A stretch of DNA of 62,645 bases from contig NW_025764978.1 in the NCBI RefSeq assembly GCF_003918875.1, positions 248,001-310,645 on the forward strand. Reading direction: 5' to 3'. Both the position numbers and the translations under genes were made by a program. Of the stretch, positions 3,698 to 53,771 are shown piece after piece (within the stretch, counting starts at the first letter, position 1; every line of letters starts with the position of its first letter). This stretch comes from Haliotis rubra (taxonomy: Eukaryota). The notes under the pieces are model-generated. The model did no database searches, was not told where the DNA came from, and saw nothing but the letters and a program-made list of their open reading frames with translations.

Positions 3698-3868
3698 GGG
3701 ATGGTGGGATAGCCTAGTGGTTAAAGCGTTCGCTCATCACGCCGAAGACCCGGTTTCGATTCCCCACATGGGCACAATGTGTGAAGCCCATTTCTGGTGT
3801 CCCCCGCCGTGATATTGCTGGAATATTGCTAAAAGCGGCGTAAAACCCAACTCACTCACTCACTCACT
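3698..3868 (+). mobile_element. tRNA-derived SINE with (ACTC)n tail
   Basis: A-box TAGCCTAGTGG, B-box-like GGTTTCGATTCCC, (ACTC)n tail, TSD TCAAGTC(T/C)TTTC. Empty site in copy B (~46801). Confidence 0.85.
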
Positions 3869-9241: not shown

Positions 9242-9442
9242 CGGAATCGCAAAAGCACTAGCTTCAACTTGTTATGTACTATGTCCAGATGTACAAAGCA
9301 CACGAAAAAAGACAATATAAATCGTTTGTTTTACAGCTCAAAGAATGACAGTTTGAGCGGTGCGCTGTCATAGCTGACACTGCTAAATATATTGCAAGGA
9401 ATATTTCTTTAAAAAATGTCTTCATCGGGTTCTTATGTTGTA

Positions 9443-11636
9443 ATACCCCCATTTCACTGGGCTGCGATCGGTCCGATTGCATTTGTAAAAAAAATCGCCA
9501 GCGATTGCATAATGTCGGAAATATACCTGGAGTAGTCGGCAGAGATAAGCAAGATACGTGAGTGTGTCTGCATAGTAAGCGTGAACGAGTTCTACCATTA
9601 TTGAGAGGCAGAAACGGCCACGTGTCATCCTCGTAATGCCAGGCTTCACACCCGATCAACCACGATTAACGCCTAATACATCTCCAACATGGAACCGAAA
9701 AGCTAATTGCCTAACAAAGCAGAGCTGTCAAAAGCCACGAATCAGCACGATTCCTCCCAAATAAGACAAGGTCCACTTACATAATGTTCAGGCTATACTC
9801 ACGATTTGCACGATTCACATCAGACTGACAGAAAAAGTATATAAGCACAGACGATCGAAGTCAACATCACTCCAATTGCAACTGCTGTAATGAAAACATT
9901 GGAACATGGCAAGAACAAAGAGAACAGCCAACAGGAAGAGGGTTAGATCACCCACCCCACCACCCTGTTGCAAAGTGTTGAGAAGACATTGCCATCGATT
10001 TGCAAGAATACCAAAGGCATTCTCAACGACTCTCCTAGTCTGTCTCACAGTCCCTGAACCACATTATTTCCCCTACTGCCAAGCCCTCTCTGCTGTGCTA
10101 AAGCCCTAAATACAGCAAGTCTAGATTTCCTCAGTCTCCCTAGGACTCCTTTTCAATATAAATGGGCTTGTTTGTTACTATCAAAATTATATATATTCAG
10201 AGATTAAGCCTTAGTCTACGACTCTCCTTGCACTGGAGATCCTGTAGTTGGCAATCAGTTCAGCTTCTGACAGACCTCTTCTTGAGTAGGGTTTCATTTG
10301 ACGAAGGGCAAATGCATCATCTGCAAGTATGAAGTAAGGCATATCCAGATCACTATTTGGCAATGGTTCAGGTTTGGGCAAGCATATGTTGTCATTTTCT
10401 TTACACTCCTTCGACTCTGCGGCATTGAAGATTTGTGCATCTGACATATGACCCAGGCCTCCGACGTCCACCCACAGAAATCTGTAATTAGCATCTACAA
10501 GGGCCAACAGGACAATGGAGAAGAAACCCTTGTAGTTGTGGTAGAGGCTTCCACTACCATGTGGCTTACGAATCGCGATGTGTTTTCCATCGAGGGCAGC
10601 AACAGCATGAGCGAGATTCCTTCTCAGCTCGAATTCCAGAGAGATGATCTTCCAATCCCCTTGAGTGACAGGACATGCAATCACTGTATCCTTGTAGTGG
10701 TCTACGATGGCTTGGCATACCTTTAGGAGAAAGATGGCTTTGGGATGTCTTGACACTCTGAGTGGGAGGGGTGCTTGTCTCCAGAGGCTAGGTGTCTTAT
10801 GGTAACTGCTAACTGCTAACAGACAAGGGTGCAGAGCTAACCTGAAGTTGGTGTCTTTCCAGGTAAGTCTAGGAGACAGCGAATTAAGCAGTTCATCAAA
10901 CATAGCAGGAGGCATTTGCAGATAGTTTAAGAAAGAAGACGTGTCTTCGAATCTGAGTTCAGATAGGAGATTGTCATAGTTTCATAAGTGAAATCTTCTT
11001 TCCAACCACGGACGTACCCAAAACCGTTTCTGTTTTCTTCTTCTTCTTGGTGTCTGGTTTCTTCTGTATTGATAGATATCTATCTCGAGTCCCATACGTT
11101 GTTGCAGCAGAAGAAGTAGTTGTGCAGCTGTGAGCAGGTTGCTAGATAATTAGAATCAGCTGTAATCGTCAGCTTTTATAGCCCAGAATCGGGTCCATTT
11201 TGTGGTTTGGAGGCCGATTTTATGTCTTCCTAGGCAATTATGTACGTACTTTACTCGGCGTCGATCGGTAATCTTCGCGTGTTATCGGCAATTACAGCAA
11301 TGAGTCTTCGATATTGTAAGCTTAACATCACTGTGTCGGTGAGCATCGTGAGGAATAGGGAGTGAATCGTAGATATATCGCCGCAGAAACGTGATTTAAA
11401 CGTAGCCAATCGGCCAACACTGGGTGAAACAGTATCAACAATGGGTGCTCAATCGCAGTGTTATCGGCGTTTATACACGTAAGTTCACAGTCCATTACGT
11501 AGGTTTACCGTAGATACTGCATAGAAAAGGAAAATATATACAAAACTGGCCGATTTAGAACGATAACATCGTAGGTGACGAATCGGCACTAGTCGGGGTA
11601 GTCTTGATAGGTCGTAGCCCAGTGAAATGGGGGCAT
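9443..11636 (-). mobile_element. PIF/Harbinger-superfamily transposon with degenerate HARBI1-like DDE nuclease
   Basis: TIRs ATACCCCCATTTCACTGGGCTGCGA / TCGTAGCCCAGTGAAATGGGGGCAT flanked by TA. ORF 10211-10915 has ALDGKHIAI, YHNYKGFFSIVLLALVDANYRFLWVDVG and ADDAFAL. The C-terminal RRVVENAFGILANRW is split off (~9960-10045). Stops and frameshifts upstream. Confidence 0.9.
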
Positions 11637-11659
11637 TATATATATAAATGTCGCTTCTG

Positions 11660-11765
11660 GGTCCCGATCCACAAAACATTCGTAGCGCTATGACATTCGT
11701 AAGCCTATGATAAACTATAGATTACGACCTGTCGTAACTTTACGAACGCTCTGTGAATCGGGACC
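11660..11765. mobile_element. Short Tourist/Harbinger-like MITE
   Basis: TIR GGTCCCGATCCACA / TGTGAATCGGGACC with a 3-bp CTG duplication. Confidence 0.6.
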
Positions 11766-11972
11766 CTGATCTAGTCAGTGATAACCAGAATGCTATTCAA
11801 ACACCTGTCTGCGTCGTCTCAAAAGATTCTACCTATACCCCGCCATCATTCGGAGGGAGGGGAATAACCCAAGAACTGACAAATTTGGAGTGCATTATTA
11901 ATGTAAAAATCGGTTGACAAGCACAAAATTACAGAAGTCCGGACAAATACGGGTAGTCGGACATATATGTGG

Positions 11973-12110
11973 CAGGGGCGGATACAGCATTTCGAGAAAG
12001 GTGGGGTGCACAGTTCAGTTTCATCGTTTTCACGAGAGAGTTTCAATGGTCATATCAACTTTCAGGACAAAAGAGGGGAGCACCCCCAACCCCCTCTGCA
12101 TCCGCCTATA
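11973..12110. mobile_element. hAT-like MITE
   Basis: CAGGGGCGGAT...ATCCGCCTAT termini with a near-perfect 8-bp flanking duplication ATATGTGG/ATATGTGT. Confidence 0.55.
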
Positions 12111-13236
12111 ATATGTGTGTTGCTATGTAGCTCAAACGAAACAGCTACCTCACGTTAAACCCCATTCACCTTTTCAAANNNNNNNNNNNNNNNNNNNNNN
12201 NNNNNNNNNNNNNNNNNNNNNNNNNNNNNNNNNNNNNNNNNNNNNNNNNNNNNNNNNNNNNNNNNNNNNNNNNNNNNNNNNNNNNNNNNNNNNNNNNNNN
12301 NNNNNNNNNNNNNNNNNNNNNNNNNNNNNNNNNNNNNNNNNNNNNNNNNNNNNNACCTATGAGGAAAAAGTAATTGCTTTGTATCAATCCGTTGAACCCA
12401 AATGTGTTCCAGGACATAAAAAACACATTTGTGCATCTTGATGAAAAACTCAAATCAATGCTGAAATCTAAAAAAATAATAAAGAGCAAAAGACAAAATC
12501 AGAATCTTAAAATGATGCTAACAAAAGCCAAATTTATTTTAAACAAACAGAATTTATTAAATCCTACTGTGTCTAACTGTGGAACGTGTCGACATATTGT
12601 TACAATACATTTATAACATAACATGTATACATTGCATGCTAACAAAAAAACACACAACATTTTAACATAGAATACCACAATATACCATAACGTACAGCTC
12701 AGGACATCACCACATAAGTTTATAACATAACTCAACTCAACAAATTTACATGAGGAAAGGGTCTCTTTTTAAGAATAACTCTATAATAAAACTCCCTGAG
12801 TAGCCGAGCCCTAGTTCATCAGATATGTATGTCGCGACAACTGAAAGATTCTGGTGATAGGTTACCGAAAACACGGAGTTAACATGATCAAACAAACCTA
12901 CTACAGAAAAAATATGTACCCACGATCTTGAAGCTTAAGCTGTTTTAAAATAGAATTAATTGAAAACAAAACCCAAACGCGTACGAGCAATGTGTCCGTG
13001 TTGGAAATGTCGGAAAGCGCACGTAAAATCTCTAAATCATCCTCACAGTCTCGAATGTCGGCTCAGGCGGGTTCAACAGGGCGCAGCAGTCAAATAGTGA
13101 CGACAATGATAAGAATAGACTACACAAGCTGGTCAAATCCTTTATTAGGAAAACAGGCTGTCACTTCAGAAGAAAAGAAGGTACACTGTTAGAACTTGGA
13201 TATCGCCGTTTATGTAACTGTACTTATCCCCAGAAA

Positions 13237-14427
13237 ATGGCCGGAAACGAGGTAGGTGGTGTGGGGACGAAGGACATGAACGTGACCCAGATTGGGTCAA
13301 ACAATGAGGTTCGGATACAGAAAACAGACATGGGGGACGTGAACATCAACATTATCTTAATCGTCCAGCCGGCAGACCCGAATCAGGCCCAGAGTAAGTA
13401 CAAACTGAAAGATTAGAAGACATTTTATTCAAGTCCTTCAAATTCACTTTGTTGTTAAAGGAGATCAGCTGAATATAAACTGAACTGTTTTTCGATAAAT
13501 GCCAATGTGAAAAAAAAGGTTTGTGTAAAAAAGAAATAGTAATAGCAATAGTCCTCTTATATGGTGCTCATATCAAGGAACATTGCCTACTCACGGCGTT
13601 ACGTACATCACTATCCCCGTTCACAGGACACTATCGTACTTTCCGATACTTTTTAAACTCCCTGGGGATCATACATCCATGCTGCCAGTTAGGCGCAATG
13701 AACTAAACACTCATATTGCCAGCACATGGGTACCCGACCTATTCGGTGTGTCGGTGGTAGTATTTGATATTATATTCATGATCAATTATTCATGATCAGA
13801 GCCCGGTCCATTTTCTTCCAAGTTAACTGTTTTTATTGGATGGTGTAGTTTCTACTGTTTGTTGATTTCACAGGATGGGATGCTTTAATTGCCCGAATCC
13901 CACTACCAAGAGTTATCTCCTGCCAAATGTTATATTATGTGTTTATATCTAGGATAAGTTATTCTTTGACAAAAAAAAGTAAAACGTTTTCAGGTTCGAG
14001 AAGCGTGAATGTGGTCTGCACGTTTAGAGACATATTGTGGTAGTTTGGGAAGTGATTATGTCAGTTTTACTCGTTAAGCAAATTTGTCTGTGTTTAATAG
14101 TATTTTGTTCTTTGTGCCTTAGATGTTAGAAAGACAGGTGGTGTTTGACCAGACCAGTAAAAAAAGTACAATTGTTTGAGGCATTTATTTTGTGTATGCA
14201 ATACCGTCATTAGAATTTCGGTTACACTTGGAAATGTACTGGTTATACACACGGTCGTAATATTGCTGTTGAAAGCGGCGTAAAACTAAACTCACTCACT
14301 CACCTTTGTTTCAGATTCTGTGGCAAATGGTGAAGTCCTTGGCAACTGCCGAGTGGAGATCAGCTGTCAGGGAAAGCGGAGAAACGCAGACCAAGGTCAG
14401 CACCAGGAAGGACGAAATTCCACATGA
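13237..14427 (+). CDS. 89-aa RHIM-like microprotein; exons 13237-13393 and 14315-14427
   Basis: Acceptor TTATCCCCAG lies just before AAAATGG. Donor CAGA|GTAAGT (phase 1), acceptor TTTGTTTCAG|AT. Spliced product: MAGNEVGGVGTKDMNVTQIGSNNEVRIQKTDMGDVNINIILIVQPADPNQAQNSVANGEVLGNCRVEISCQGKRRNADQGQHQEGRNST*. Not in the ORF track. Confidence 0.6.
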
Positions 14428-16752
14428 CTCTGAGAAGTCATTGTAGAGATCCATAGATGATACATACCTGTATTTAAACAAACACAAACACGAAACAAAA
14501 ACGGTCCTTAATGGTACATACCTGTACTCGAAGAAAAACAAAAGTGTAAATAGAACACACAAAAAAAACCAAGCATTTTTGGGGGTGGTGTGGTGGTGCC
14601 AACAGAGATACTATTTTGTCGGTCACTGTCACAGTGAAAACACACCACCACCCCTCTCATACAGCAAGGTCTTGCAGCTAAAGCCAAGAAGGTACCCGCT
14701 GTTGAGAGTCTGAAGTACTCCACGAGGTTAAGCAGGCCTTATCCTGGGGAGCAAGCCAAAGGCCCGTCTGTGCCTATAGATAGCTATACTGAACAAAGAC
14801 ACTATATTTCCTTGATCAGTATATGTTCGGAAACAGGTAACAAATATATGTCGCTAATGCTGTCCAAAACAGGTGGTACCCACAAACGAGAGTCTGAAGA
14901 ACTCCACGAGGTATAAATACGCCTTAGACCGCGACACTAGCCAAAGGACCGTCTGTGCCTATAGATAGCTATACTGAACAAAGACACTATTTTTCCTTGA
15001 TCAGTGTATGTTCGGAAACAGGCCAACAACAAACAAAAACGAAAAAAAAAGACTCATAATGGAAAAAAGGAACAGAAAAAAGCGAATGATTTTCATGCAT
15101 TTTGTTCCTACAGTTAGTTACTAGCTTCAGTGTTGTTTTTAGAATCTATGTAGATGATCCACATGTGCACTGGTCCATCGACTTGTGTCGACCAAGTCGG
15201 GCTTTTACATAATGTCCGTTATCAGTTGGGACTGGAATATTTCTTAGTCACATAAGTATATATTTTATTCATATGATCCTCACTGGCTTATCCCAATATT
15301 TCTTTGATTGGCAAAGGCATTCAGTATTAAAATGTCACATTTTGGCATCTGATATGAGAAAAGGCTTTGAAAATTATTATGACGATAAATAATTAAATCA
15401 AATAATGAGTTATGGAAAAGTATTGAAGTAGCCTGAAGTACAATTATGAATGATTTGCCGGGCCATCTAATACAACTACCTATGAACAAAAAGACAACCT
15501 TCATTCGTTTTCATTCCGTTTCGAGAATGAAGATGTCGTGCTTCTTCATGGGACATGATTTCAGGAATACAGTTCGCTCAACCCCAATGTATAGTGCAAT
15601 CAAGTACGCTTTTGCCCTGAACTATTATAGTGAAAGTACGAGGACGTTCGAGTGATTTAACATTTTAACAGTGTGTTATGCAAACCATGAAACGGGGTGC
15701 TACGAAGTAGGTTACTGTAGGTGACTGTACGAGGCGATGACAACTGACATGCATCGTGACGTCGGTTACCAAGGGTACGTTTGATAACGAGGGGACAGAC
15801 GAGAATGGCGTAGTTACGTCAATACAGTGTGACGTAATACAAAATGTGTACTTTATCCCCCGATGCCTTTGATCTTTCAGCGAAGTATCTTAGATAAAAC
15901 TTTAATAGATAAGTCAGAAATAGACCATAGCATATCCATGCCGAAACAAGTATGAATTTTTTACCTATTTTCCCGAACGGCACATTGAAGTGTTTCGTGG
16001 ATGTGTTATTCATTGTATCAGACTTTTGCATGTAAACCAATTATGTCTGCACGAGAAAGGAATATTCTCATATATTTTATTCCGTTTCGCCGACTTTTCT
16101 CGCCTTGGTTTCAAGAGGGGTGCATCAAATTTTCAAACTATGTAAACAAAGTAATCTACCTCAGATCATGCAACATTCTCTCAGTTGGATCTCTCTTTGC
16201 ATTGCATCGGAATTCAGCCAAGTTTAAACTTGTGTATTTTGTAACGATTATTGTCTGTGTAAAGATAAATCAAGTATTTGTTCTACAGTTTATAGGACTT
16301 TTTACATGGTATTCTTTCTAAACACCGATGAAATATTTGTTCAAAATTGTCACTATCATACCACGTTAAACGATAGTTTGACTGATGTTTGATTAGAGGT
16401 ACATTTCTTTGTAATGCATTACACTGACGACGGTTGTCCCACATCATGTCTTTTATTTGCTGTTTGGTTGCCTTGTACGGAGTTACTAAATAATTAACTA
16501 CAAACTAAACATTTGTGTGTTGTTCTTTCTGGTGAAGAGCATCTCCTCGTGTGTGGACATTTCCGTGTTGTGACCTTCACCTTCACCCATAAAGAGTGTT
16601 TCCGGTAGAGCAGTGGGCATCATTTTCCTTGTTTGTTGTTTAATACCGCAGGCATAAATCTTCCACCTGTTCTCAAATTGTGAAGAACTGAGTTTCCACC
16701 AGACAAGACAGTGATTGCCATGCATGGTGATCATCGATAGAGGCAGTGGATC

Positions 16753-17048
16753 CCATGATATATGTGGTACAGTATCAGATAGGTCATCTAGCCTCTATAC
16801 CTACCCAGCCTCCATGATATATGTGGTACAGTATCAGATAGGTCATCTAGCCTCTATACCTACCCAGCCTCCATGATATATGTGGTACAGTATCAGATAG
16901 GTCATCTAGCCTCTATACCTACCCAACCCCCATGGTATATGTGGTACAGTATCAGATAGGTCATCTAGTCTCTATACCTACACAACCTCCATGGTATATG
17001 TGGTACAGTATCAGATAGGTCATCTAGCCTCTATACCTACACAACCTC
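16753..17048. repeat. 59-bp minisatellite, 5 copies
   Basis: CCATGATATATGTGGTACAGTATCAGATAGGTCATCTAGCCTCTATACCTACCCAGCCT at a 59-bp period. Confidence 0.95.
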
Positions 17049-20000
17049 ATTCATGGCCACCTGTCACAAGAAAGGAGGGAAGAAGAAGCCTTCTTACCTT
17101 AAACGGAAGCATCAGTGTTACTGTTAATTAGTAAGTGTGACATTCCAAAGTGTGCTGCGTCATTGTGATAAATGAGTAGATGTGAACCATCGTACATTTG
17201 TAAAGATGTTCAAAGACCAGGGTTAAAACTGGTCTTCAGCAACTCATGTTTGTCGTAAGCGGAAGTTGACGGGTTTGCGTGGTCAGGAACACATATTGAT
17301 TGATTCATGTCATCGTAACCCAATTGCACAGTCGATGCACATGATGTTGATCACTCGATTATCTAGTCAAGACACGAATATTTACATACCGCCGTCATGT
17401 ACTGAGATACTGCTGAGTGCGACGCTAGACAACAAACAAAGATGATCCAACGATTAATCCGAAGCTGCTACCAGTTGTTAAAGCCACAGTTGATGGCAAC
17501 ATCCATGAAAGAAACTTTCCAACTTTTAGGGAACATATATGCTGAAATATTAAATGGCAAGTTGCTAATTGTTTATAGACGTAACATCGTTCAAAGCGGT
17601 GTAAAGTTTTACCCATTTCTGACCGACATCAATTGAACAGAGTAATTGTGAACGTATAACCAGCTGAACACGTAGCTTACTACAGTACAGGAAAGAGACG
17701 CCTGTACGTTGTTTAACGAGTGTCCAGCAAGTGAAAGACTATAAATAAATTGTATGAATTTAACTTGACTTCCGCCCGGCTGTCACAACTGAACGTGTCC
17801 ATGTCAAAGGGCAGCACGCATGCGCAGTCATACACAAAGATATACACCAGTATACCCTTTGTGATCTTTTCACTGCTGGAATATTAAGCCGAAATGATGG
17901 AATTTTCAGTGAAAACCTTTCACTTCAAGAAATCTAATCCCAATGAAGTCAGAAGGACAATAATGACAACCAGAATATGGTGACATTAAGTAAGATGGCG
18001 GAATTTCAATCAAACAGCTTTCACTTCTAGACATCTTATCCCGATGAAGTCAAAGGACTATCATTTCATAAAATCCAAAATATGGTGGCATTACTGTTCT
18101 GGAGTGGAAATGATTATTGCAGTGAAACTAAGCAGGATTAACAGATGGGTTTATGGGAATTCCATATGGGTATCATTTGTAAATTCGTAGTTAATGCCTA
18201 CATTTACCTGGCTGGAGAAGCGTATATTGCACAACAGGTTATTCTTAAGATTAATTATAACATTTGGAAGGAAGTTTTGTTATAAAGGTCAATGCACCTG
18301 ATGTATTGAGATGATGGTTTACCTTCTGATGAAGATACGGCGAGCAAGTCTGTCTGGTATAATAATGAAATCAAAATTGATGATTAGTATATGTATTTTC
18401 CAATAATGACATTGAAAAGGTACAGCATTCGTACATGATATCATTTATGATGCGGAGAAACATAATCGCGACATTTACATATGAACATAACTACTTCATC
18501 TCTTAGTCGCGTTAAATATTTGAACTGGAGAATGAAATATAAGAAAATAGCATTTCAAGCCGATGGGATGGGATCGAGTCGGGGAGAGGGAGAATGAGGG
18601 ACTGACTTTATGCTAACAAGGTCATGTGCAGTTACTAATACAAGACCAAGTGTATTACAATTTGTAGGGCAATCAACCAGGAAAGTCAGTGCTATAAATA
18701 GACTGCCTTTGTGAAAAATTGAAAGCAATGCAATAGCTCCGAGATATGTTATCTCAACACACGAAAGACCTTTCTACATGTATGAAGTGAGAATGCGCGC
18801 AGAGAACGTGACACCAGGTCACTATGAGTGGGGAGCAGGCTTAAATTATTCCCCGAGAAACCCTCACCCTCGCGGACTTGGCTCACGTGTGTCAACGCAG
18901 GGGAAACAGCTATTTCAGTCTTTCTTCACGACGTCTACGACCAGTACACATTAATCAAATGGCCGCAGATCAAGTTGTCAAAAGACTTAAGTTTATGTTC
19001 TATAGTGTTTGGTCATTGTTTAACGTCACGCTCCGAAATAGGTAAACTGTCGAATATGGACCTGATAATCCAGTGATCATTAGTATCGACCTTCGCAACC
19101 AGGATACGATGACATGTGTCAACCAAGTCAGCCTGACCGTCCGATCCTGTTAGTCGCTTCTTACGACAAGCATGGGCTGCTGAAGATCAGTTCTAACCTG
19201 GATCTTCATTGGTACATGTTATTTCTCACAGAATGAAGACCCTCAGAACCTCACGGTGTACAGATATTTGACGAACATTCACACTCATGATCAGCTGGAT
19301 ATCCTGTAAGACTTTGAAAACAGATCTCACAGATCAATAAGAAGTGAGTGAGTGAGTGAGTTTTACGCCACACTCAGCAATATTCCAACTATATGGCCGT
19401 GGTCTGTAAATAATCGAGTCTGGACCAGACAATGCAGTGATCAACAGCATCGGCATCAATCTATGCAATTGAGTACCAATGACATGTGTCCACCAAGCCA
19501 ACGAGCCTGACCACCAGATCCCGTTAGTCGCCCCTTACGACAAGCATTGGTTACTGAAGATCAATTCTAACCTGGATCTTCACGGGTCAGATCAGTAAAG
19601 AAGAATTAAGCCACAATACATTATAGAAACACTTCAGATATAAGGATGAGTCAGGTAAAGACTTACCCAAGAGTACCTGAAGTATTAAGGTGGAGGTCGA
19701 ATAAGGCTGATCCGTATCAAATATATCTTTTAAACAGATTATCAAGAAACATGGACAGAAGATATATTTATTATATAAAGACGATACTAACGAGATGGAA
19801 TTCCAGTCTATCAGGTGCACGATCAGGGAGATGGTTCGGTTCAAAGTAGGTTTTATGAAAATACGATCACATCATCGGACAGTACGATTCCGACCGAAGG
19901 TAGTGGAATATTACTGTCGCCTGAGGAATATATGCTAATCTTCTTTTAGAAATTACTGAGATTAAAAGCTTGTGAGATCCCCTTAAACCAGCAAAATACA

Positions 20001-21152
20001 ACACAATCACGTCTATTATATTCAATTATATAGGGAATATATATAGCTACAAAGAATGTCAGTACCGATTTCCAATACAATACTATTGGAAAATCAAGAT
20101 TTATGGATGTCGACTTCTTTATTGTGAATAACAATACAAGTATACAAGAAGAACAATACAACAATTGTGAAATTGACATCCCAAAACTCACCAAAGTCTT
20201 GATATTACCACTAAATACAGATGTATTGATTGAAGACAGCTGTTGAAAGTTCATTGTAGACGAAGCCTCTTGAGTGGTAGGTCTTGAAACGTCGATGTTA
20301 GCATGCAGATGGGTGTAAATCCAAAGTCATCCCCCATACATCAACAACCATCCCTTATATACCTATTATACAGTTCTGTTTCTTTTCTAGCAAAAGCCAT
20401 GCCACGCTACGATCTTCTCACTGCTTCCACAATCCGACCGGAAGCAAACCAAACAAAGGGAGGCAACTCATCAGCCCACTCTCAACAGGTGACATTACAT
20501 AGCCCAAGTTCAAGACGAAAGTTCAAATCCACATTCAGCATCTCAAATATTTGTGACCCATGTTAACTAAAAGTTAATTATGAGACATTGTAATTAACAA
20601 ATCACATCCTCATAACGAAATACATATTCCAACTGAATAGCCTACTTGTATATATCAATGTGAATGTTCAAAGCAAATAGCTGCACTATATATCCAAATA
20701 AATGTTCAAACTAAATGACACATTTCATATCAAAATACATGTTCAAAGCAAATGGCTTTATTACATATCAAACTAATATTTAATCTGCATGACTACATCG
20801 CATATCAAAGTAAATGTTCAAACTAAATGGCTATATTACAGATCAAACTAATATCCAAACTAATATATATATATATATATATATCACATAGATAAATAAA
20901 AACAGAATGCCTTTTTCCCCAATATGTTTCGTTCTTTACTCTTCAGGGAGATTGTAGCAGTTACAGTATGACGTCATTACATATATATTGTGACGTCGCA
21001 ATATGTATTTCATACATATATATATATATATATATACAATGTGACCCCGTACAAATGTAATGTGTCATACACTGGGGTGGCACATGAGCTTTTACACAAT
21101 ATGAACCCCAATACATGCTACGTCTGTATACGGGGATGGCTTATTGTGCCTC

Positions 21153-24100
21153 TCAAGCATGTAGCGTCTCATACACAGGGGGCTGCACATTGTCCATCTT
21201 CTCGTACACGTGATCCGGATGGGTCACACTGGTTATGTCATCTCCTGCATCTCCCGTGTCATCCTGGTAGGTGGGGTTTCTCACGGCACCAGCAGTAACG
21301 CCTATCTTCTTTTGCTTGTTCGTCACGACCATTCTGTAAACAAGTTGTTAAAATATTAACTCGTATTCGTTGCTGACAGGCAAGCAAATATTCGATTGAT
21401 GAACATAATTCAATTCAATGCCAAAACTGTATTACATCCTGATTTTATAGCTCCTAATTTGATAACTTTATGTTATATATAAAAAGTGAATTTTAACTAA
21501 ATGAGTGAGTGAGTGAGTTGGCTTTTACGCCGCTTTTAGCAATATTCGAGCAATATCACGACGGGTTTTAACTGAATGAAATACTTGACTCTTCCTTCTT
21601 GTGGGTCCCTACATTTTAACCTTAATGAAAGAATATTGGTTTCTATGGTTACCTTCTACATCTGACCAGGAGGATCACGAGAACCACCACAACCAATCCC
21701 AGAAAGACACAAACAGACACCAGCGCCCAGACAACAAGGTTCCAATCTGCAGTACAAATGACAGGTAGACATATTAACAACCACAAAACCAGGAGATGGT
21801 GTGGTCGTGTGCATACAGCCAAGGTCACAAATCAGTTGAAGTTAAACAACGTTGGTCACATAGAGTCAGTGTTGACGGTGTTCGGCAGCTTGACTCCTGA
21901 GAGTTTCTATGACTTCCGTCCTGACCCCAAACAAAGCATTCGTGACACACGTGGTCTGACACACGTGAATGGGTACCCGGCGGGATAAGTCAGATGACTG
22001 TCAAGCTTATAGCTCCTCACAGGCAGCGTGAATAAAGGCCATCATTGTCCTTATCATTATTCCAAGACAACACCGATGAGAGCTTCCCCACAGTGGTGGA
22101 CATCACTGACCAGGGTACTGTTCAAAGCAGTATAGTCAGTTTGCAGTAAAAAAACTACCGATGAATTTTACTTTAAACCAAAAAGTACAATCGGATATAG
22201 AGAAATTAAGATTGCGAATCCTCATAATTTTACCTTTCCAATTGAACATGGAAAATCTCAGAATGTTATTCAACTTGCGATAAAAGTTGTTTGTCAAACG
22301 GTCATAGTTTCAAATCGCTATTATTGGTTTGTATTACAAGGGGGTATGCACATTAAATGAAAAACCGAGAACAAGTAAGGTTGGTCTAAGTTAACGCTCA
22401 TAACGTACCGCACGTGCATTTGTTTCACTGTTCCAACTAATTCGCTTCCCCCTTTGTAATACAAACCAATAATAGCAATTTGACACCAAAGTTTTATCCT
22501 TAGTTGAATAAGATTCTGCTACGCGCCTGCCAGGTACATAGAACCCAGCAACGCTGACGGAGCCGTGTAATAAAAACCTCTTCGTGATAACTAGCTTCAT
22601 TGTTTATACCTTCATGATATAATTCTTGTACCAAGTTTCCGGCTTGACACGTGCCGTTAGCGGGATGACAGGGGGCGCCGCCAACACATTGGTCACACAG
22701 ATTCCCGCAGCGCTCGCCGTAGGTACCATTTGGACATGCTTTCAAAAAATACGCCATGTGTAAAAATCTCTCTGACGAATTGATTAGCCATCGTTCAAAT
22801 CTGATAATCAAAACACTAAATTCATATTCATATCGTCTAGGTACTAAAAGCGATAGAGTCATATCAGATCTAGTGGACAGGTGAGCACCAGGAAGGTACA
22901 AAAACTGAAATACCTCCACCTACATTCAGACCATTTAAGACAACATCCCGTGCACCCAACTTAAACCTAATGCTGATGGCCCGATCATTCATTGCGGTAA
23001 AGCATGACCATGTCTCAGTCATTTAAAGACGCTCACCACCTTTGCCTGAATTATTTATCAGGTAATTTGAACGTCAGACTAGGATGTTATCTTTGTTCAA
23101 GATAAGAAAGCAACTCAACAAAAACTATTGTCGTAAATCTTTAGCTAAACATAGAACACCGTCGCAACTCTGTAGTTGAACAAACATCACTGTCGTAATT
23201 CTGTAGCTTGATATTGTTCACTGTGTTCAGTCTATAGTTTAGTACAGATCAGTGTCGTAACTCTATAGTGTAACTCAGACGACATTCATGACGTACTTCT
23301 TTCGGATAGATGTCTGTTGTGTCCTTTTAGTTTAACAGATGATGCTGTCGTAATTCTGTACTTTAACACAGACTTATATCGTTACTCTATAGTTTAACAC
23401 AAATTGTGCAGTTGTGATTTGAGGACCGTACACATCGTACATTGCAACCAACACCCATGTTCAAGTGGACGCTAACTCGAACAGCTCGAGCGAATGCTAA
23501 TAACACAGCGTTTTCACAGTGCCTTTGCCCGAGCGCCTCTGAACGATTTGTTGGAATTAAGTTTATTATAATCAGTACTATTATCTATTATAACTCCTTC
23601 ATACACACCAGTAGTGCACGTGTCGCCAATCCAGCCAGTGTCACACCCATCTGCACAATGGCCATCGATGTTGTCACAAGCACTTCCATTGAAGCATTTC
23701 CCACATTCCCGGGTGCACAGCCGACCATACCACCCAGAGGGACAACCTGTTGAACGATACACAGATACAGCACGTTAACACTGTGTGACAGAGATACACA
23801 GCCGACCATACCATCCAGAGGGACAGCCTGTTGAACGATAAAACAGATACAGCACGTTAACACTGTGTGACAGAGATGCACAGCCGACCATACCAGCCAG
23901 AGGGACAGCCTGCTGAATGATACACAGATATAGCACGTTCACACTGTGTGACAGAGATACACATCCGACCATACCATCCAGAGGGACAGCCTGTTGAACG
24001 ATACACAGATACAGCACGTTAACACTGTGTGACAGAGATGCACATCCGACCATATCACCCAGAGGGACAACCTGTTGAACGATACACAGATACAGCACGT

Positions 24101-41109: not shown

Positions 41110-41255
41110 GGACGGTTAAAGCGTTCACGCCGAAGACCCGGGTTCGACTCCCCACCCGGGTTCGAGTTCAATGTGTGAAGCCCATTTCTTGTGTCCCCCC
41201 GCCGTGATACTGCTGGGGTACTGCTAACAGCGGCGTAAAACTAAACTCACTCACT
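41110..41255 (+). mobile_element. tRNA-derived SINE (degenerate); homologue at 53145-53277
   Basis: GGTTAAAGCGTTC...GGTTCGACTCCC...GCGGCGTAAAACTAAACTCACTCACT. Confidence 0.75.
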
Positions 41256-52934: not shown

Positions 52935-53771
52935 GTAGGTGCCACTTTCTTCATTTTACTTTCCCAGCTTGTCCAAGACTGAATCCGCCATGAAGGTTAC
53001 CTTCAAATAATTCTACAAGGAAACACACAAATATTGAACAACTGCAAAACAACATTTCTGTTATCCTGTGAAATCTACCCTAAGGCTGACCCCACCTTAT
53101 CACTATAACAAGAGCATTTGTCAATGATTCGCTATCAAACTGGGGACGACTACAGCGTTCACGCGGAAGGCCCGATTCCCCATATGGTAACAACGTGTGA
53201 AGCCCATTTCTTGTGTCCCCCGGCGTGATATTGCTGGAATACTGCTAACAGCGGCGTAAAACTAAACTCACTCACTATCAAGCTGTGTTGGCATATGGAG
53301 TTTTCCAGCTTATCCTGGCACCCGTCACAACCACATGTGAGGACACGGCAACTCTCATATACCCACGTATACATACACATATAGCATTACTGCATATCTC
53401 AAATCAATATGTTACTATAGATTGACCCACTGCAAAGGCTGCAGCAAACAGCTGGTGAAGTGAACTCATGTCTGTCCTGGTTGCTGCCTCTTTAACATGT
53501 AATTTATACAGGTCAAATTACGTGTGTACGTTTGTATTAAGGGTCAACATGTACGTAGATGTCTAAGAATTATAGAGTGACTTACTTCAATCAGAGTATT
53601 GGATGTCCTTCGCAAGACCTCTCTGGCTCTGGTATGCAATATAAGTTACTATTCTATGAAATCGTTTTAAGATTTGTCGTTTGTAAAAGCTGCTATTCTT
53701 TCTACATTTCATCACAGAGACAACGGCGAGTGGTGACATACGAACCAGGGATCTGTTCAAACTTCGGGGCA

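What the first reader, a model, noticed from the sequence alone, without database searches (positions are those of the whole stretch)
13237..14427. Hidden 89-aa two-exon RHIM microprotein absent from the ORF track
Seen: canonical splice sites and phase continuity give a peptide whose only structured-looking parts are NVTQIGSNNEVRI and DVNINIILIVQP. Its last exon (LGNCRVEISCQG...QGQHQ) loosely echoes the last exon of tandem-RHIM copy B (PGDCDVVTIKHG...GQGHQ), with the same intron phase. An upstream ORF (12992-13180) could splice in frame over a 53-nt intron, which is uncertain. Inference: a minimal, diverged family member and the best candidate for a Pirk-like inhibitor.
Basis: partly seen in the sequence, partly recalled or inferred. 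Interest (0 to 1): 0.7.

Follow-up and report, generated by a model that had tools for sequence, protein, structure and literature searches.

The report
Frameshifted abalone RHIM-like small-protein gene copy
The two predicted exons are real and belong to a small gene family found only in abalone, whose protein carries one invariant RHIM-like motif; but this copy has lost the family's conserved tail through a frameshift, and no test shows that the motif is a true RHIM or an inhibitor.

Summary
The window is Haliotis rubra contig C88:248001-310645. The 89-codon, two-exon reading (13237-13393, 14315-14427) is there as described.

Support for a real gene:
- It is one of five paralogues in this genome. 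RefSeq 'uncharacterized protein' orthologues exist in H. asinina (syntenic) and H. rufescens, and they use the same phase-1 junction.
- All seven sequences keep the ATG and the frame. VTQIGS is invariant, and exon-1 indels are all multiples of three.
- Between species pN is below pS (0.21 against 0.41, p = 0.0014).

- The family tail (...KFHMTLRSHxRGP) is out of frame here. Relative to the other copies, six bases are missing at 14350/14351 and one at 14380/14381.
- The 'GNC...QGQHQ' echo of tandem copy B comes from those derived changes. Among the six aligned tandem proteins, GQGHQ occurs only in copy B.
- The upstream ORF is not coding.
- Pfam RHIM and a PDB profile search give no hit, and hhalign to the tandem proteins aligns only the motif (probability 3.5%). 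The tetrad is T-Q-I-G.
- Transcription of this copy could not be tested.

The Pirk-like role is untested. The scan has already followed up the neighbouring two-motif family on other DNA.

The parts
13234..13393 (+). Motif-bearing coding exon. The acceptor CCCCAG| ends at 13233, the ATG is at 13237, and the donor GTAAGT starts at 13394 (phase 1).
   Evidence: ATG, frame and donor are kept in all five paralogues. In the H. asinina and H. rubra protein models the residues ahead of the ATG are encoded far upstream.
13279..13320 (+). Conserved core, residues N15-Q28 (NVTQIGSNNEVRIQ), the RHIM-pattern motif. Coordinates correct to within a codon.
   Evidence: VTQIGS is invariant in all seven sequences from three species. 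Synonymous changes occur at V, S, N, V and R. In the core L001 and L004 differ by 2 synonymous and 0 non-synonymous changes.
13321..13393 (+). Variable second half of exon 1, including the beta-prone DVNINIILIVQP stretch.
   Evidence: It carries in-frame indels of 3, 6, 3 and 12 bases among the paralogues and an 11-codon Asn/Ile expansion in H. rufescens.
13394..14314 (+). Phase-1 intron of 921 bases.
   Evidence: It is 97-98% identical to the introns of L004 and L005, while exon 1 differs by 12-14%.
14315..14427 (+). Exon 2 as read in this copy, ending in TGA at 14425-14427. After 14380 the frame is shifted relative to the family.
14350..14351 (+). Site where six bases present in the four other copies are missing (in frame).
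   Evidence: Alignment. X4 contigs cover 14348-14349 at depth 49 and show none of the inserted letters that the X2 and X3 contigs carry there.
14380..14381 (+). Site where one base present in the four other copies is missing. This is the frameshift that removes the conserved tail.
   Evidence: No read-level check was possible.
14373..14456 (+). The family's conserved basic tail (...KFHMTLRSHCRDP, then TAG), still readable but in the frame not used by this copy.
   Evidence: tblastn of P0002 and P0003 gives 61-67% identity, E = 7.6e-7 and 3.4e-5.
13007..13180 (+). Most likely non-coding (intron or leader).
   Evidence: Stop at codon 7 in L002 and L003, a frameshift in L005, and 6 amino-acid changes from 8 base changes between L001 and L004. 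blastn shows no match to it in H. rufescens, and in H. asinina the match covers only its last bases, from 13133.
14259..14303 (+). 3' end of a very high-copy repeat, 11 bases before the exon-2 acceptor.
   Evidence: Summed contig word-depth reaches 2.8e6 in run X4. Other copies lie elsewhere in the window.

Best explanation
The locus is one of five Haliotis rubra copies of a genuine, abalone-restricted small-protein gene with two coding exons. It is the copy syntenic with the H. asinina gene.

Intact members (L004 and L005 here; H. asinina 110 aa; H. rufescens 113 aa) encode a protein that ESM predicts to be disordered (modelled for the H. asinina protein). It has three parts:
- an invariant NVTQIGSNNxVRIQ-type motif;
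- a variable beta-prone segment;
- a conserved basic tail ending ...KFHMTLRSHxRGP.

The window copy keeps the motif exon intact. Relative to the other copies it lacks six bases and one base in exon 2, so its 89-aa product ends in 15 unrelated residues. No counterpart of the 5' exon used by other copies was found in the unmasked window. It is therefore most likely a decaying copy, or at best a tail-less one.

Inferred, not shown: the family acts through its motif as a short beta-strand assembly element. That element would pair with the very similar second motif of the two-motif proteins encoded in the same cluster, and so modulate their assembly.
For: Shown:
- Paralogues and their exon structure.
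- Orthologues and organism. H. asinina synteny from window 9243 to 21845. Same junction in the H. asinina and H. rufescens loci.
- Coding constraint. Exon-1 indels are 3, 6, 3 and 12 bases, while flank and intron indels have arbitrary lengths. Between H. asinina and H. rufescens pS = 0.41 and pN = 0.21, Fisher p = 0.0014. The core has synonymous-only changes between L001 and L004.
- Derived frameshift. Four of five copies and both orthologues read the other frame, and the tail is still present out of frame at 14373-14453.
- The 5' exon has no match in the unmasked window or within 8.9 kb upstream of L004.
- ESM Atlas model of the H. asinina protein: pLDDT 0.31.

Supporting the inference:
- BLASTP and hhalign both place the motif on the second motif of the tandem proteins (E = 0.03 and 0.012 for single comparisons).
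- Q[IVL]G.NN occurs only in these genes in the window, 4 times against 0.04 expected.
- The two families lie on the same contig or chromosome in all three species.
- Against L002, exon 1 is better conserved than the intron (13% against 21%, p = 0.028), whereas exon 2 is not.
Against: - No transcript evidence exists for this copy. Contigs over exon 2 in X2 and X3 carry extra letters in exon 2 that this copy lacks, and may come from another copy or allele.
- The single-base gap was not verified at read level and could be an assembly error.
- The motif link to the tandem proteins is weak statistically: hhalign probability 3.5%, 17-28 columns.
- No profile ties either family to RHIM. Pfam gives no hit for this family and 6.7-9.6 bits, below the 20-bit cut-off, for three of the five tandem queries scanned; the other two gave no hit. 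PDB searches give no RIPK hit.
- pN/pS among the H. rubra copies is about 0.5-1.1, so constraint outside the core is weak.
- A tail-less copy could still be functional. L002 and L003 have also lost the canonical tail, and L003 carries a RefSeq model.
Confidence: 0.55

Rival explanations
1. One reading: the 89-aa product as written is an intact, functional single-RHIM microprotein. It would cap or poison assemblies of RHIM proteins, acting as a Pirk-like negative regulator of NF-kB-type signalling.
For: - The motif exon is intact, with an invariant core.
- The motif resembles the neighbours' second motif.
- Three of five H. rubra copies lack the canonical tail yet keep exon 1, so a motif-only product may be tolerated or used.
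- Pirk is described as a RHIM-like-region protein that disrupts signalling by binding the PGRPs (PMC13506858).
Against: - The C-terminus of this copy is a frameshift product.
- No 5' exon was found and there is no expression evidence.
- No profile similarity to RHIM.
- No abalone receptor or adaptor partner is known.
Confidence: 0.12
2. The family is real but has nothing to do with RHIM or amyloid signalling. The conserved motif and the basic tail (KRxKRRPR..., NLS-like by composition) would serve another role, for instance a small nuclear or nucleic-acid-binding protein. The likeness to the neighbours' motif would then be shared ancestry without shared mechanism, or coincidence.
For: - All profile tests for RHIM fail.
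- The first tetrad residue is T, outside the published (V/I)-Q-(V/I/L/C)-G (PMC13506858).
- The most conserved part of exon 2 across species is the basic tail, not a beta segment.
Against: - The match to Q[IVL]G.NN plus alternating hydrophobic residues is specific to the cluster's genes.
- Both alignment tools place it on the tandem proteins' second motif.
- The linkage is conserved in three species.
Confidence: 0.28
3. The frameshift is an assembly error or a rare allele, and the locus normally encodes a canonical family member of about 98 aa with the conserved tail.
For: - The tail is almost intact in the other frame.
- A single missing base is a typical long-read assembly error (own knowledge).
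- Contigs from X2 and X3 across exon 2 carry extra letters there.
Against: - X4 contigs cover the neighbouring six-base site at depth 49 without the extra letters seen in X2 and X3.
- The X2 and X3 contigs are about 4% different over their length and may come from another copy.
- The missing base is not in a homopolymer.
Confidence: 0.12
4. The reading frame is a chance ORF in non-coding, duplicated DNA and no protein is made by any copy.
For: - Flanks and introns of the copies are as similar as the exons or more so.
- pN/pS is near 1 in some paralogue pairs.
Against: - Frame-preserving indels occur only in the exon.
- Across species pN is below pS, p = 0.0014.
- ATG, donor and motif are intact in seven sequences.
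- RefSeq models exist in three species.
Confidence: 0.03

Closest known systems
Haliotis 'uncharacterized proteins': LOC124280586 (XP_046572521.1, H. rubra), XP_067663061.1 (H. asinina), LOC124134413 (XP_046355162.2, H. rufescens)
   Same: - Exon-1 peptides align at 67-76% identity, with VTQIGS invariant.
- Same phase-1 junction and same two-coding-exon layout.
- The H. asinina gene is syntenic with this locus.
   Different: - The window copy reads a frameshifted 15-residue end in place of the conserved ...KFHMTLRSHxRGP tail.
- It has no detectable 5' exon.
Abalone two-motif ('tandem RHIM-like') proteins: LOC124280522 (P0005) and its relatives, with about ten full or partial copies in this genome
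   Same: - The motif resembles their second motif (IVQLGNNNIVYVY).
- Same strand and same cluster.
- A phase-1 intron precedes the last exon.
- Linked in three species.
   Different: - One motif instead of two.
- None of their strongly conserved domain after the motifs (GDTVVVYVPP...CEQRGP...).
- hhalign probability is 3.5%, with nothing aligned outside the motif.
- There is no DNA-level similarity.
RHIM of RIPK1, RIPK3, ZBP1 and TRIF (Pfam PF12721)
   Same: A short beta-prone segment with Q-[IVL]-G followed by Asn and alternating hydrophobic residues. Tetrad positions 2-4 fit the published consensus (PMC13506858).
   Different: - The first tetrad residue is Thr.
- No Pfam hit even at E = 10, and no match to RHIM-bearing chains in the PDB.
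- No kinase, death, TIR or Z-alpha domain is attached.
Drosophila Pirk and the cRHIM proteins of the IMD pathway
   Same: A small protein whose only recognisable feature is a RHIM-like region. The proposed action is interference with a motif-driven assembly (PMC13506858).
   Different: - No sequence relationship was tested or found.
- The cRHIM is described there as VxxG, which is not the pattern here.
- No PGRP/IMD partner, induction or binding is known for the abalone family.
Viral RHIM decoys such as murine cytomegalovirus M45
   Same: The idea of a motif-bearing protein that joins host RHIM assemblies and blocks signalling (abstract of PMC8883498 as listed).
   Different: This is a host gene, conserved in three abalone species. 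It has no viral context and no canonical tetrad.

Membership tests
RHIM (PF12721; RIPK1/RIPK3/ZBP1/TRIF type) | Core tetrad (V/I)-Q-(V/I/L/C)-G (PMC13506858) | tested here: not met
   The tetrad is T-Q-I-G in all seven family sequences. Positions 2-4 fit and position 1 does not.
RHIM (PF12721; RIPK1/RIPK3/ZBP1/TRIF type) | Score at or above the curated Pfam cut-off (20 bits) | tested here: not met
   No hit at E <= 10 for the window exon, L004, L005 or P0001-P0003. In the neighbouring tandem family three of the five queries scanned reach 6.7-9.6 bits and two give no hit.
RHIM (PF12721; RIPK1/RIPK3/ZBP1/TRIF type) | An 18-20-residue amyloidogenic segment with Asn after the Gly and alternating hydrophobic residues | tested here: met
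   The pattern [IVT]Q[IVL]G..N.[IVLMT].[IVLMFY] is matched. It occurs 4 times in the window against 0.02 in shuffles, and only in the cluster's genes. This is a pattern-level test chosen after seeing the motif.
RHIM (PF12721; RIPK1/RIPK3/ZBP1/TRIF type) | Forms homo- or hetero-amyloid with other RHIM proteins | not testable with these tools
   Needs peptide or protein assays.
Pirk-like / cRHIM negative regulators | Sequence relationship to Pirk, or a cRHIM (VxxG) motif | tested here: inconclusive
   No Pfam family matches at all. The library search found Haliotis proteins plus one spurious bacterial hit. I made no direct comparison with Pirk, because no tool-derived Pirk sequence was in hand.
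Pirk-like / cRHIM negative regulators | Induced by the pathway it inhibits, and binds the receptor or adaptor | not testable with these tools
   No usable RNA runs were available.
Haliotis small-protein family (LOC124280586 / LOC124134413 / XP_067663061.1) | Homologous motif exon with the invariant VTQIGS core | tested here: met
   E = 1.2e-13 to 2.9e-10 against the paralogues. The profile scores 68.6-104.7 bits on the three Haliotis proteins. Alignment A2.
Haliotis small-protein family (LOC124280586 / LOC124134413 / XP_067663061.1) | Two coding exons joined by a phase-1 intron at the same position | tested here: met
Haliotis small-protein family (LOC124280586 / LOC124134413 / XP_067663061.1) | Conserved basic C-terminal tail (...KFHMTLRSHxRGP) read in frame | tested here: not met
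   The tail is present at 14373-14453 but out of frame, because one base is missing at 14380/14381.
Abalone two-motif proteins (LOC124280522 family) | Homology beyond the motif, including the conserved domain after the motifs | tested here: not met
   hhalign aligns 17-28 columns at probability 3.5%. BLASTP finds no exon-2 alignment and blastn finds no DNA match.

The most novel reading that the evidence does not exclude
Abalone carry a lineage-specific, two-part assembly module in one gene cluster. Two-motif proteins would act as scaffolds, and single-motif microproteins with an invariant core and fast-changing flanks would join the same beta-strand assemblies as caps, adaptors or inhibitors. 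Tail-less copies such as this one would be natural motif-only variants. That would be a RHIM-like signalling system that arose outside the RIPK and IMD families.
Probability: 0.15. Interest if true: 0.7.

Novelty: new variant of a known kind. Interest (0 to 1): 0.36.

Why it matters
If the motif really drives assembly, this cluster would give molluscs a compact and experimentally tractable pair: a two-motif protein and a one-motif microprotein. Such a pair could be used to study how short amyloid-type motifs are regulated outside vertebrate necroptosis and the insect IMD pathway.

As it stands, the result is mainly corrective:
- the gene family is real and restricted to abalone;
- this copy is its frameshifted member;
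- the features that suggested kinship of the last exons are artefacts of that frameshift.

The finding also gives a clear example of paralogues whose introns are far more alike than their coding exon. That points to gene conversion or to exon-focused diversification.

Tried and rejected
1. Word-index protein search with exon 1 (29-91 aa candidates): nothing. With P0002 it returned only itself. That index misses this family, so no conclusion is drawn from it.
2. RNA evidence. The one sequencing-run search gave no run on record as RNA, and the one read-laying run returned contigs only. Exon 1 is uncovered in all four runs, so expression stays open.
3. P0004, an 1807-aa metagenome protein with seven 'matches'. 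It has no Q[IVL]G at all, is Gly-rich and has a signal peptide. I rejected it as a compositional hit.
4. Exon 2 against the tandem proteins' last exon: no BLASTP alignment at E <= 100, and hhalign aligns nothing there.
5. DNA-level relation of the locus to the tandem genes: only the high-copy repeat tail matches.
6. Pfam RHIM scan of the whole genome: five sites at 18-21 bits with E = 0.46-5.7 for the genome, none on C88. Uninformative.
7. Whether the 299-aa gene upstream of the orthologues is a two-motif gene: no support in the part fetched.
9. ESM Atlas neighbours of P0002: no usable hits.
10. Papers: nothing on these loci or on RHIM in Haliotis.

The spliced 89-aa product was never searched as one sequence.

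Full report
**What is at the coordinates.** The window is animal DNA. A profile search later identified it as Haliotis rubra contig C88:248001-310645: XP_046572521.1 lies on a 310,645-base contig.
- The ATG is at 13237.
- Exon 1 runs to 13393 (52 codons plus one base), followed by GTAAGT.
- The acceptor is ...tttgtttcag before 14315, and the stop is TGA at 14425-14427.
- The product is 89 residues and contains NVTQIGSNNEVRI and DVNINIILIVQP.

**It is a gene family, not a chance ORF.**
- Exon 1 has four more copies in the genome: C88:153866 (L004), C88:212192 (L003), C88:215675 (L002) and C998:37307 on the minus strand (L005). They are 70-76% identical in protein and all are open.
- Exon 2 matches lie about 1 kb downstream of L004 and L005.
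- All five copies keep the ATG, the frame and the GTAAGT donor.
- A profile of the five peptides, run against 1.84 billion representative proteins, found four proteins. Three are Haliotis RefSeq 'uncharacterized proteins': H. rubra LOC124280586 (which is L003), H. asinina XP_067663061.1 and H. rufescens LOC124134413.
- The fourth is a Gly-rich bacterial-type surface protein without any Q[IVL]G. I rejected it as spurious.
- The H. asinina locus is syntenic with the window from about 9243 to 21845.
- In H. asinina and H. rufescens my reading of the loci against the proteins puts the exon 1 / exon 2 junction at the same phase-1 position. The H. rubra L003 model joins exon 1 to an AG nine bases further on, because the usual acceptor reads CAT there.

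**Coding constraint.**
- In exon 1 all indels among the paralogues are multiples of three (3, 6, 3, 12). H. rufescens has an in-frame 11-codon Asn/Ile expansion.
- In flanks and introns the indels have arbitrary lengths.
- VTQIGS is invariant in seven sequences from three species, while synonymous changes occur in and around it.
- Between H. asinina and H. rufescens, over both exons, pS = 0.41 and pN = 0.21 (Fisher p = 0.0014). L004 against H. asinina gives p = 0.003.
It is passed.

**This copy is the frameshifted member.**
- The other four H. rubra copies carry six more bases at 14350/14351 and one more base at 14380/14381.
- L004, L005 and both orthologues read a basic tail ending ...KFHMTLRSHxRGP. 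L002 and L003 have lost that tail in other ways.
- In the window the tail is still present at 14373-14453, followed by TAG, but in the unused frame.
- The window product therefore ends in 15 residues (RNADQGQHQEGRNST) that no relative shares.
'GNC' comes from the six-base gap and 'QGQHQ' from the frameshift.
- On the other side, GQGHQ occurs only in copy B (P0005) among the six aligned tandem proteins.
- BLASTP finds no alignment between the two last exons, and hhalign aligns nothing there. The shared intron phase has a one-in-three chance expectation.

**The upstream ORF (13007-13180).**
- It has a stop at codon 7 in L002 and L003 and a frameshift in L005. Between L001 and L004 it shows 6 amino-acid changes from 8 base changes.
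- The H. rubra and H. asinina models place ...SQ(R/T)Q directly before the residue that precedes the start codon. In H. asinina those residues are encoded in a small exon 3.1 kb upstream, ending ...CAG|GTAAGG.
- H. rufescens has the same exon 0.9 kb upstream but without an ATG, and its model starts at the conserved ATG.
- The conserved ATG at 13237 is therefore the start, and the 53-base 'intron' is not supported.
- No counterpart of that 5' exon was found in the unmasked window or within 8.9 kb upstream of L004, whose upstream flank is 96% identical to this copy's.
- The masked block 12179-12354 was left alone. The genome copy returned as L001 spans it. It entered an automatic alignment, but I did not print or read its letters, and every figure I quote is from 12400 onward.

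**Expression.**
- The one run search found no run on record as RNA.
- The one read-laying run gave Logan contigs only. Exon 1 (13204-13337) has zero depth in all four runs, and no 13393/14315 joint is listed.
- Contigs over exon 2 in X2 and X3 carry extra letters in exon 2. X3's net surplus of seven letters equals the 6 + 1 bases that the other copies have there (my inference).
- Expression of this copy is therefore unknown.
- RefSeq models with spliced mini-exons exist for a paralogue and for both orthologues. That suggests, from my knowledge of how such models are built, that the family is transcribed. It is an inference.

**Is it a RHIM?**
- The published definition is an 18-20-residue amyloidogenic segment with the tetrad (V/I)-Q-(V/I/L/C)-G (PMC13506858).
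- Here the tetrad is T-Q-I-G. Pfam RHIM gives no hit at E <= 10 for any family member.
- A family profile finds no RHIM-bearing chain in the PDB.
- In the neighbouring two-motif family, three of the five queries scanned reach 6.7-9.6 bits against a 20-bit cut-off and two give no hit. Their motif region finds nothing in the PDB.
- The pattern-level likeness is nevertheless real. BLASTP (E = 0.03) and hhalign (E = 0.012, probability 3.5%) both lay the motif on the second motif of the two-motif proteins.
- Q[IVL]G.NN occurs in the six-frame window only in those genes and here, 4 times against 0.04 expected.
- The two families are linked in all three species. On C88 they alternate in units of 54-59 kb.
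- The H. asinina protein is predicted to be disordered (pLDDT 0.31).

**Mechanism.**
- Shown: a conserved small protein family with an invariant motif, variable flanks and a basic tail, of which this copy is tail-less.
- Inferred: the motif is a beta-strand assembly element that pairs with the neighbours' motifs. The tail, basic and NLS-like by composition, would give localisation or binding.
- A Pirk-like inhibitory role is possible, but it rests only on size and motif.
- A weak point in favour of the motif being the functional part: against L002, exon 1 is better conserved than the intron (13% against 21%, p = 0.028), while exon 2 is not.

**An unexplained feature.**
- Between this copy and L004 or L005 the intron differs by 2-3% but exon 1 by 12-14% (p = 1.7e-5 and 6e-9).
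- Synonymous divergence there (0.21-0.27) is as high as against H. asinina.
- Exon 1 groups L002-L005 together (shared Met-9), whereas the introns group L001 with L004 and L005.
- Gene conversion with breakpoints at the exon, or exon-focused diversification, could explain this. I did not resolve it.

**Verdict.** The family is annotated but uncharacterised and restricted to abalone, and this locus is its frameshifted copy.

Noticed in passing
window 14259-14303 (also 3822-3863, 19344-19384, 21505-21546, 41221-41255, 53242-53276): The 3' end of a very high-copy repeat (…GGCGTAAAACTAAACTCACTCACTCAC) lies 11 bases before the exon-2 acceptor. H. asinina has the same tail fragment in front of its acceptor. 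L002 and L003 carry a full tRNA-like SINE body inserted just upstream. The repeat tail may contribute to the acceptor region.
   Followed up: partly
window 13237-14314, against L004 and L005: The paralogues' introns are 97-98% identical while the coding exon between them is only 86-88% identical, with high synonymous divergence. Exon and intron give conflicting groupings of the five copies.
   Followed up: partly
window 14673-15031; L011:15501-17448; L010:10891-12351: A unit of about 180 bases just downstream of the gene is present twice here. It is amplified to about ten copies in H. asinina and several in H. rufescens.
   Followed up: no
G000 contig C88, 134617-302368: Two-motif genes lie at 134617, 188632, 247762, 289684 and 301772. 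Single-motif genes lie at 153866, 212192, 215675 and 261237. All are on the + strand, giving a repeated unit of 54-59 kb.
   Followed up: partly
L002 and L003 (C88:215675 and 212192), exon-2 acceptor: The canonical acceptor CAG reads CAT in both copies. The RefSeq model for L003 uses an AG nine bases further on and reads a different, longer C-terminus without the family tail.
   Followed up: partly
window 12179-12354: This block is masked in the window, yet the genome copy returned by the genome search (L001) shows no N. Its letters were not read. The 5' exon of the syntenic H. asinina gene would map in or near this block.
   Followed up: no
window 1372 (+): The last exon of the two-motif gene at the window's left edge (copy A) lies only about 1 kb after its motif exon. 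In copy B the distance is about 2.5 kb.
   Followed up: no
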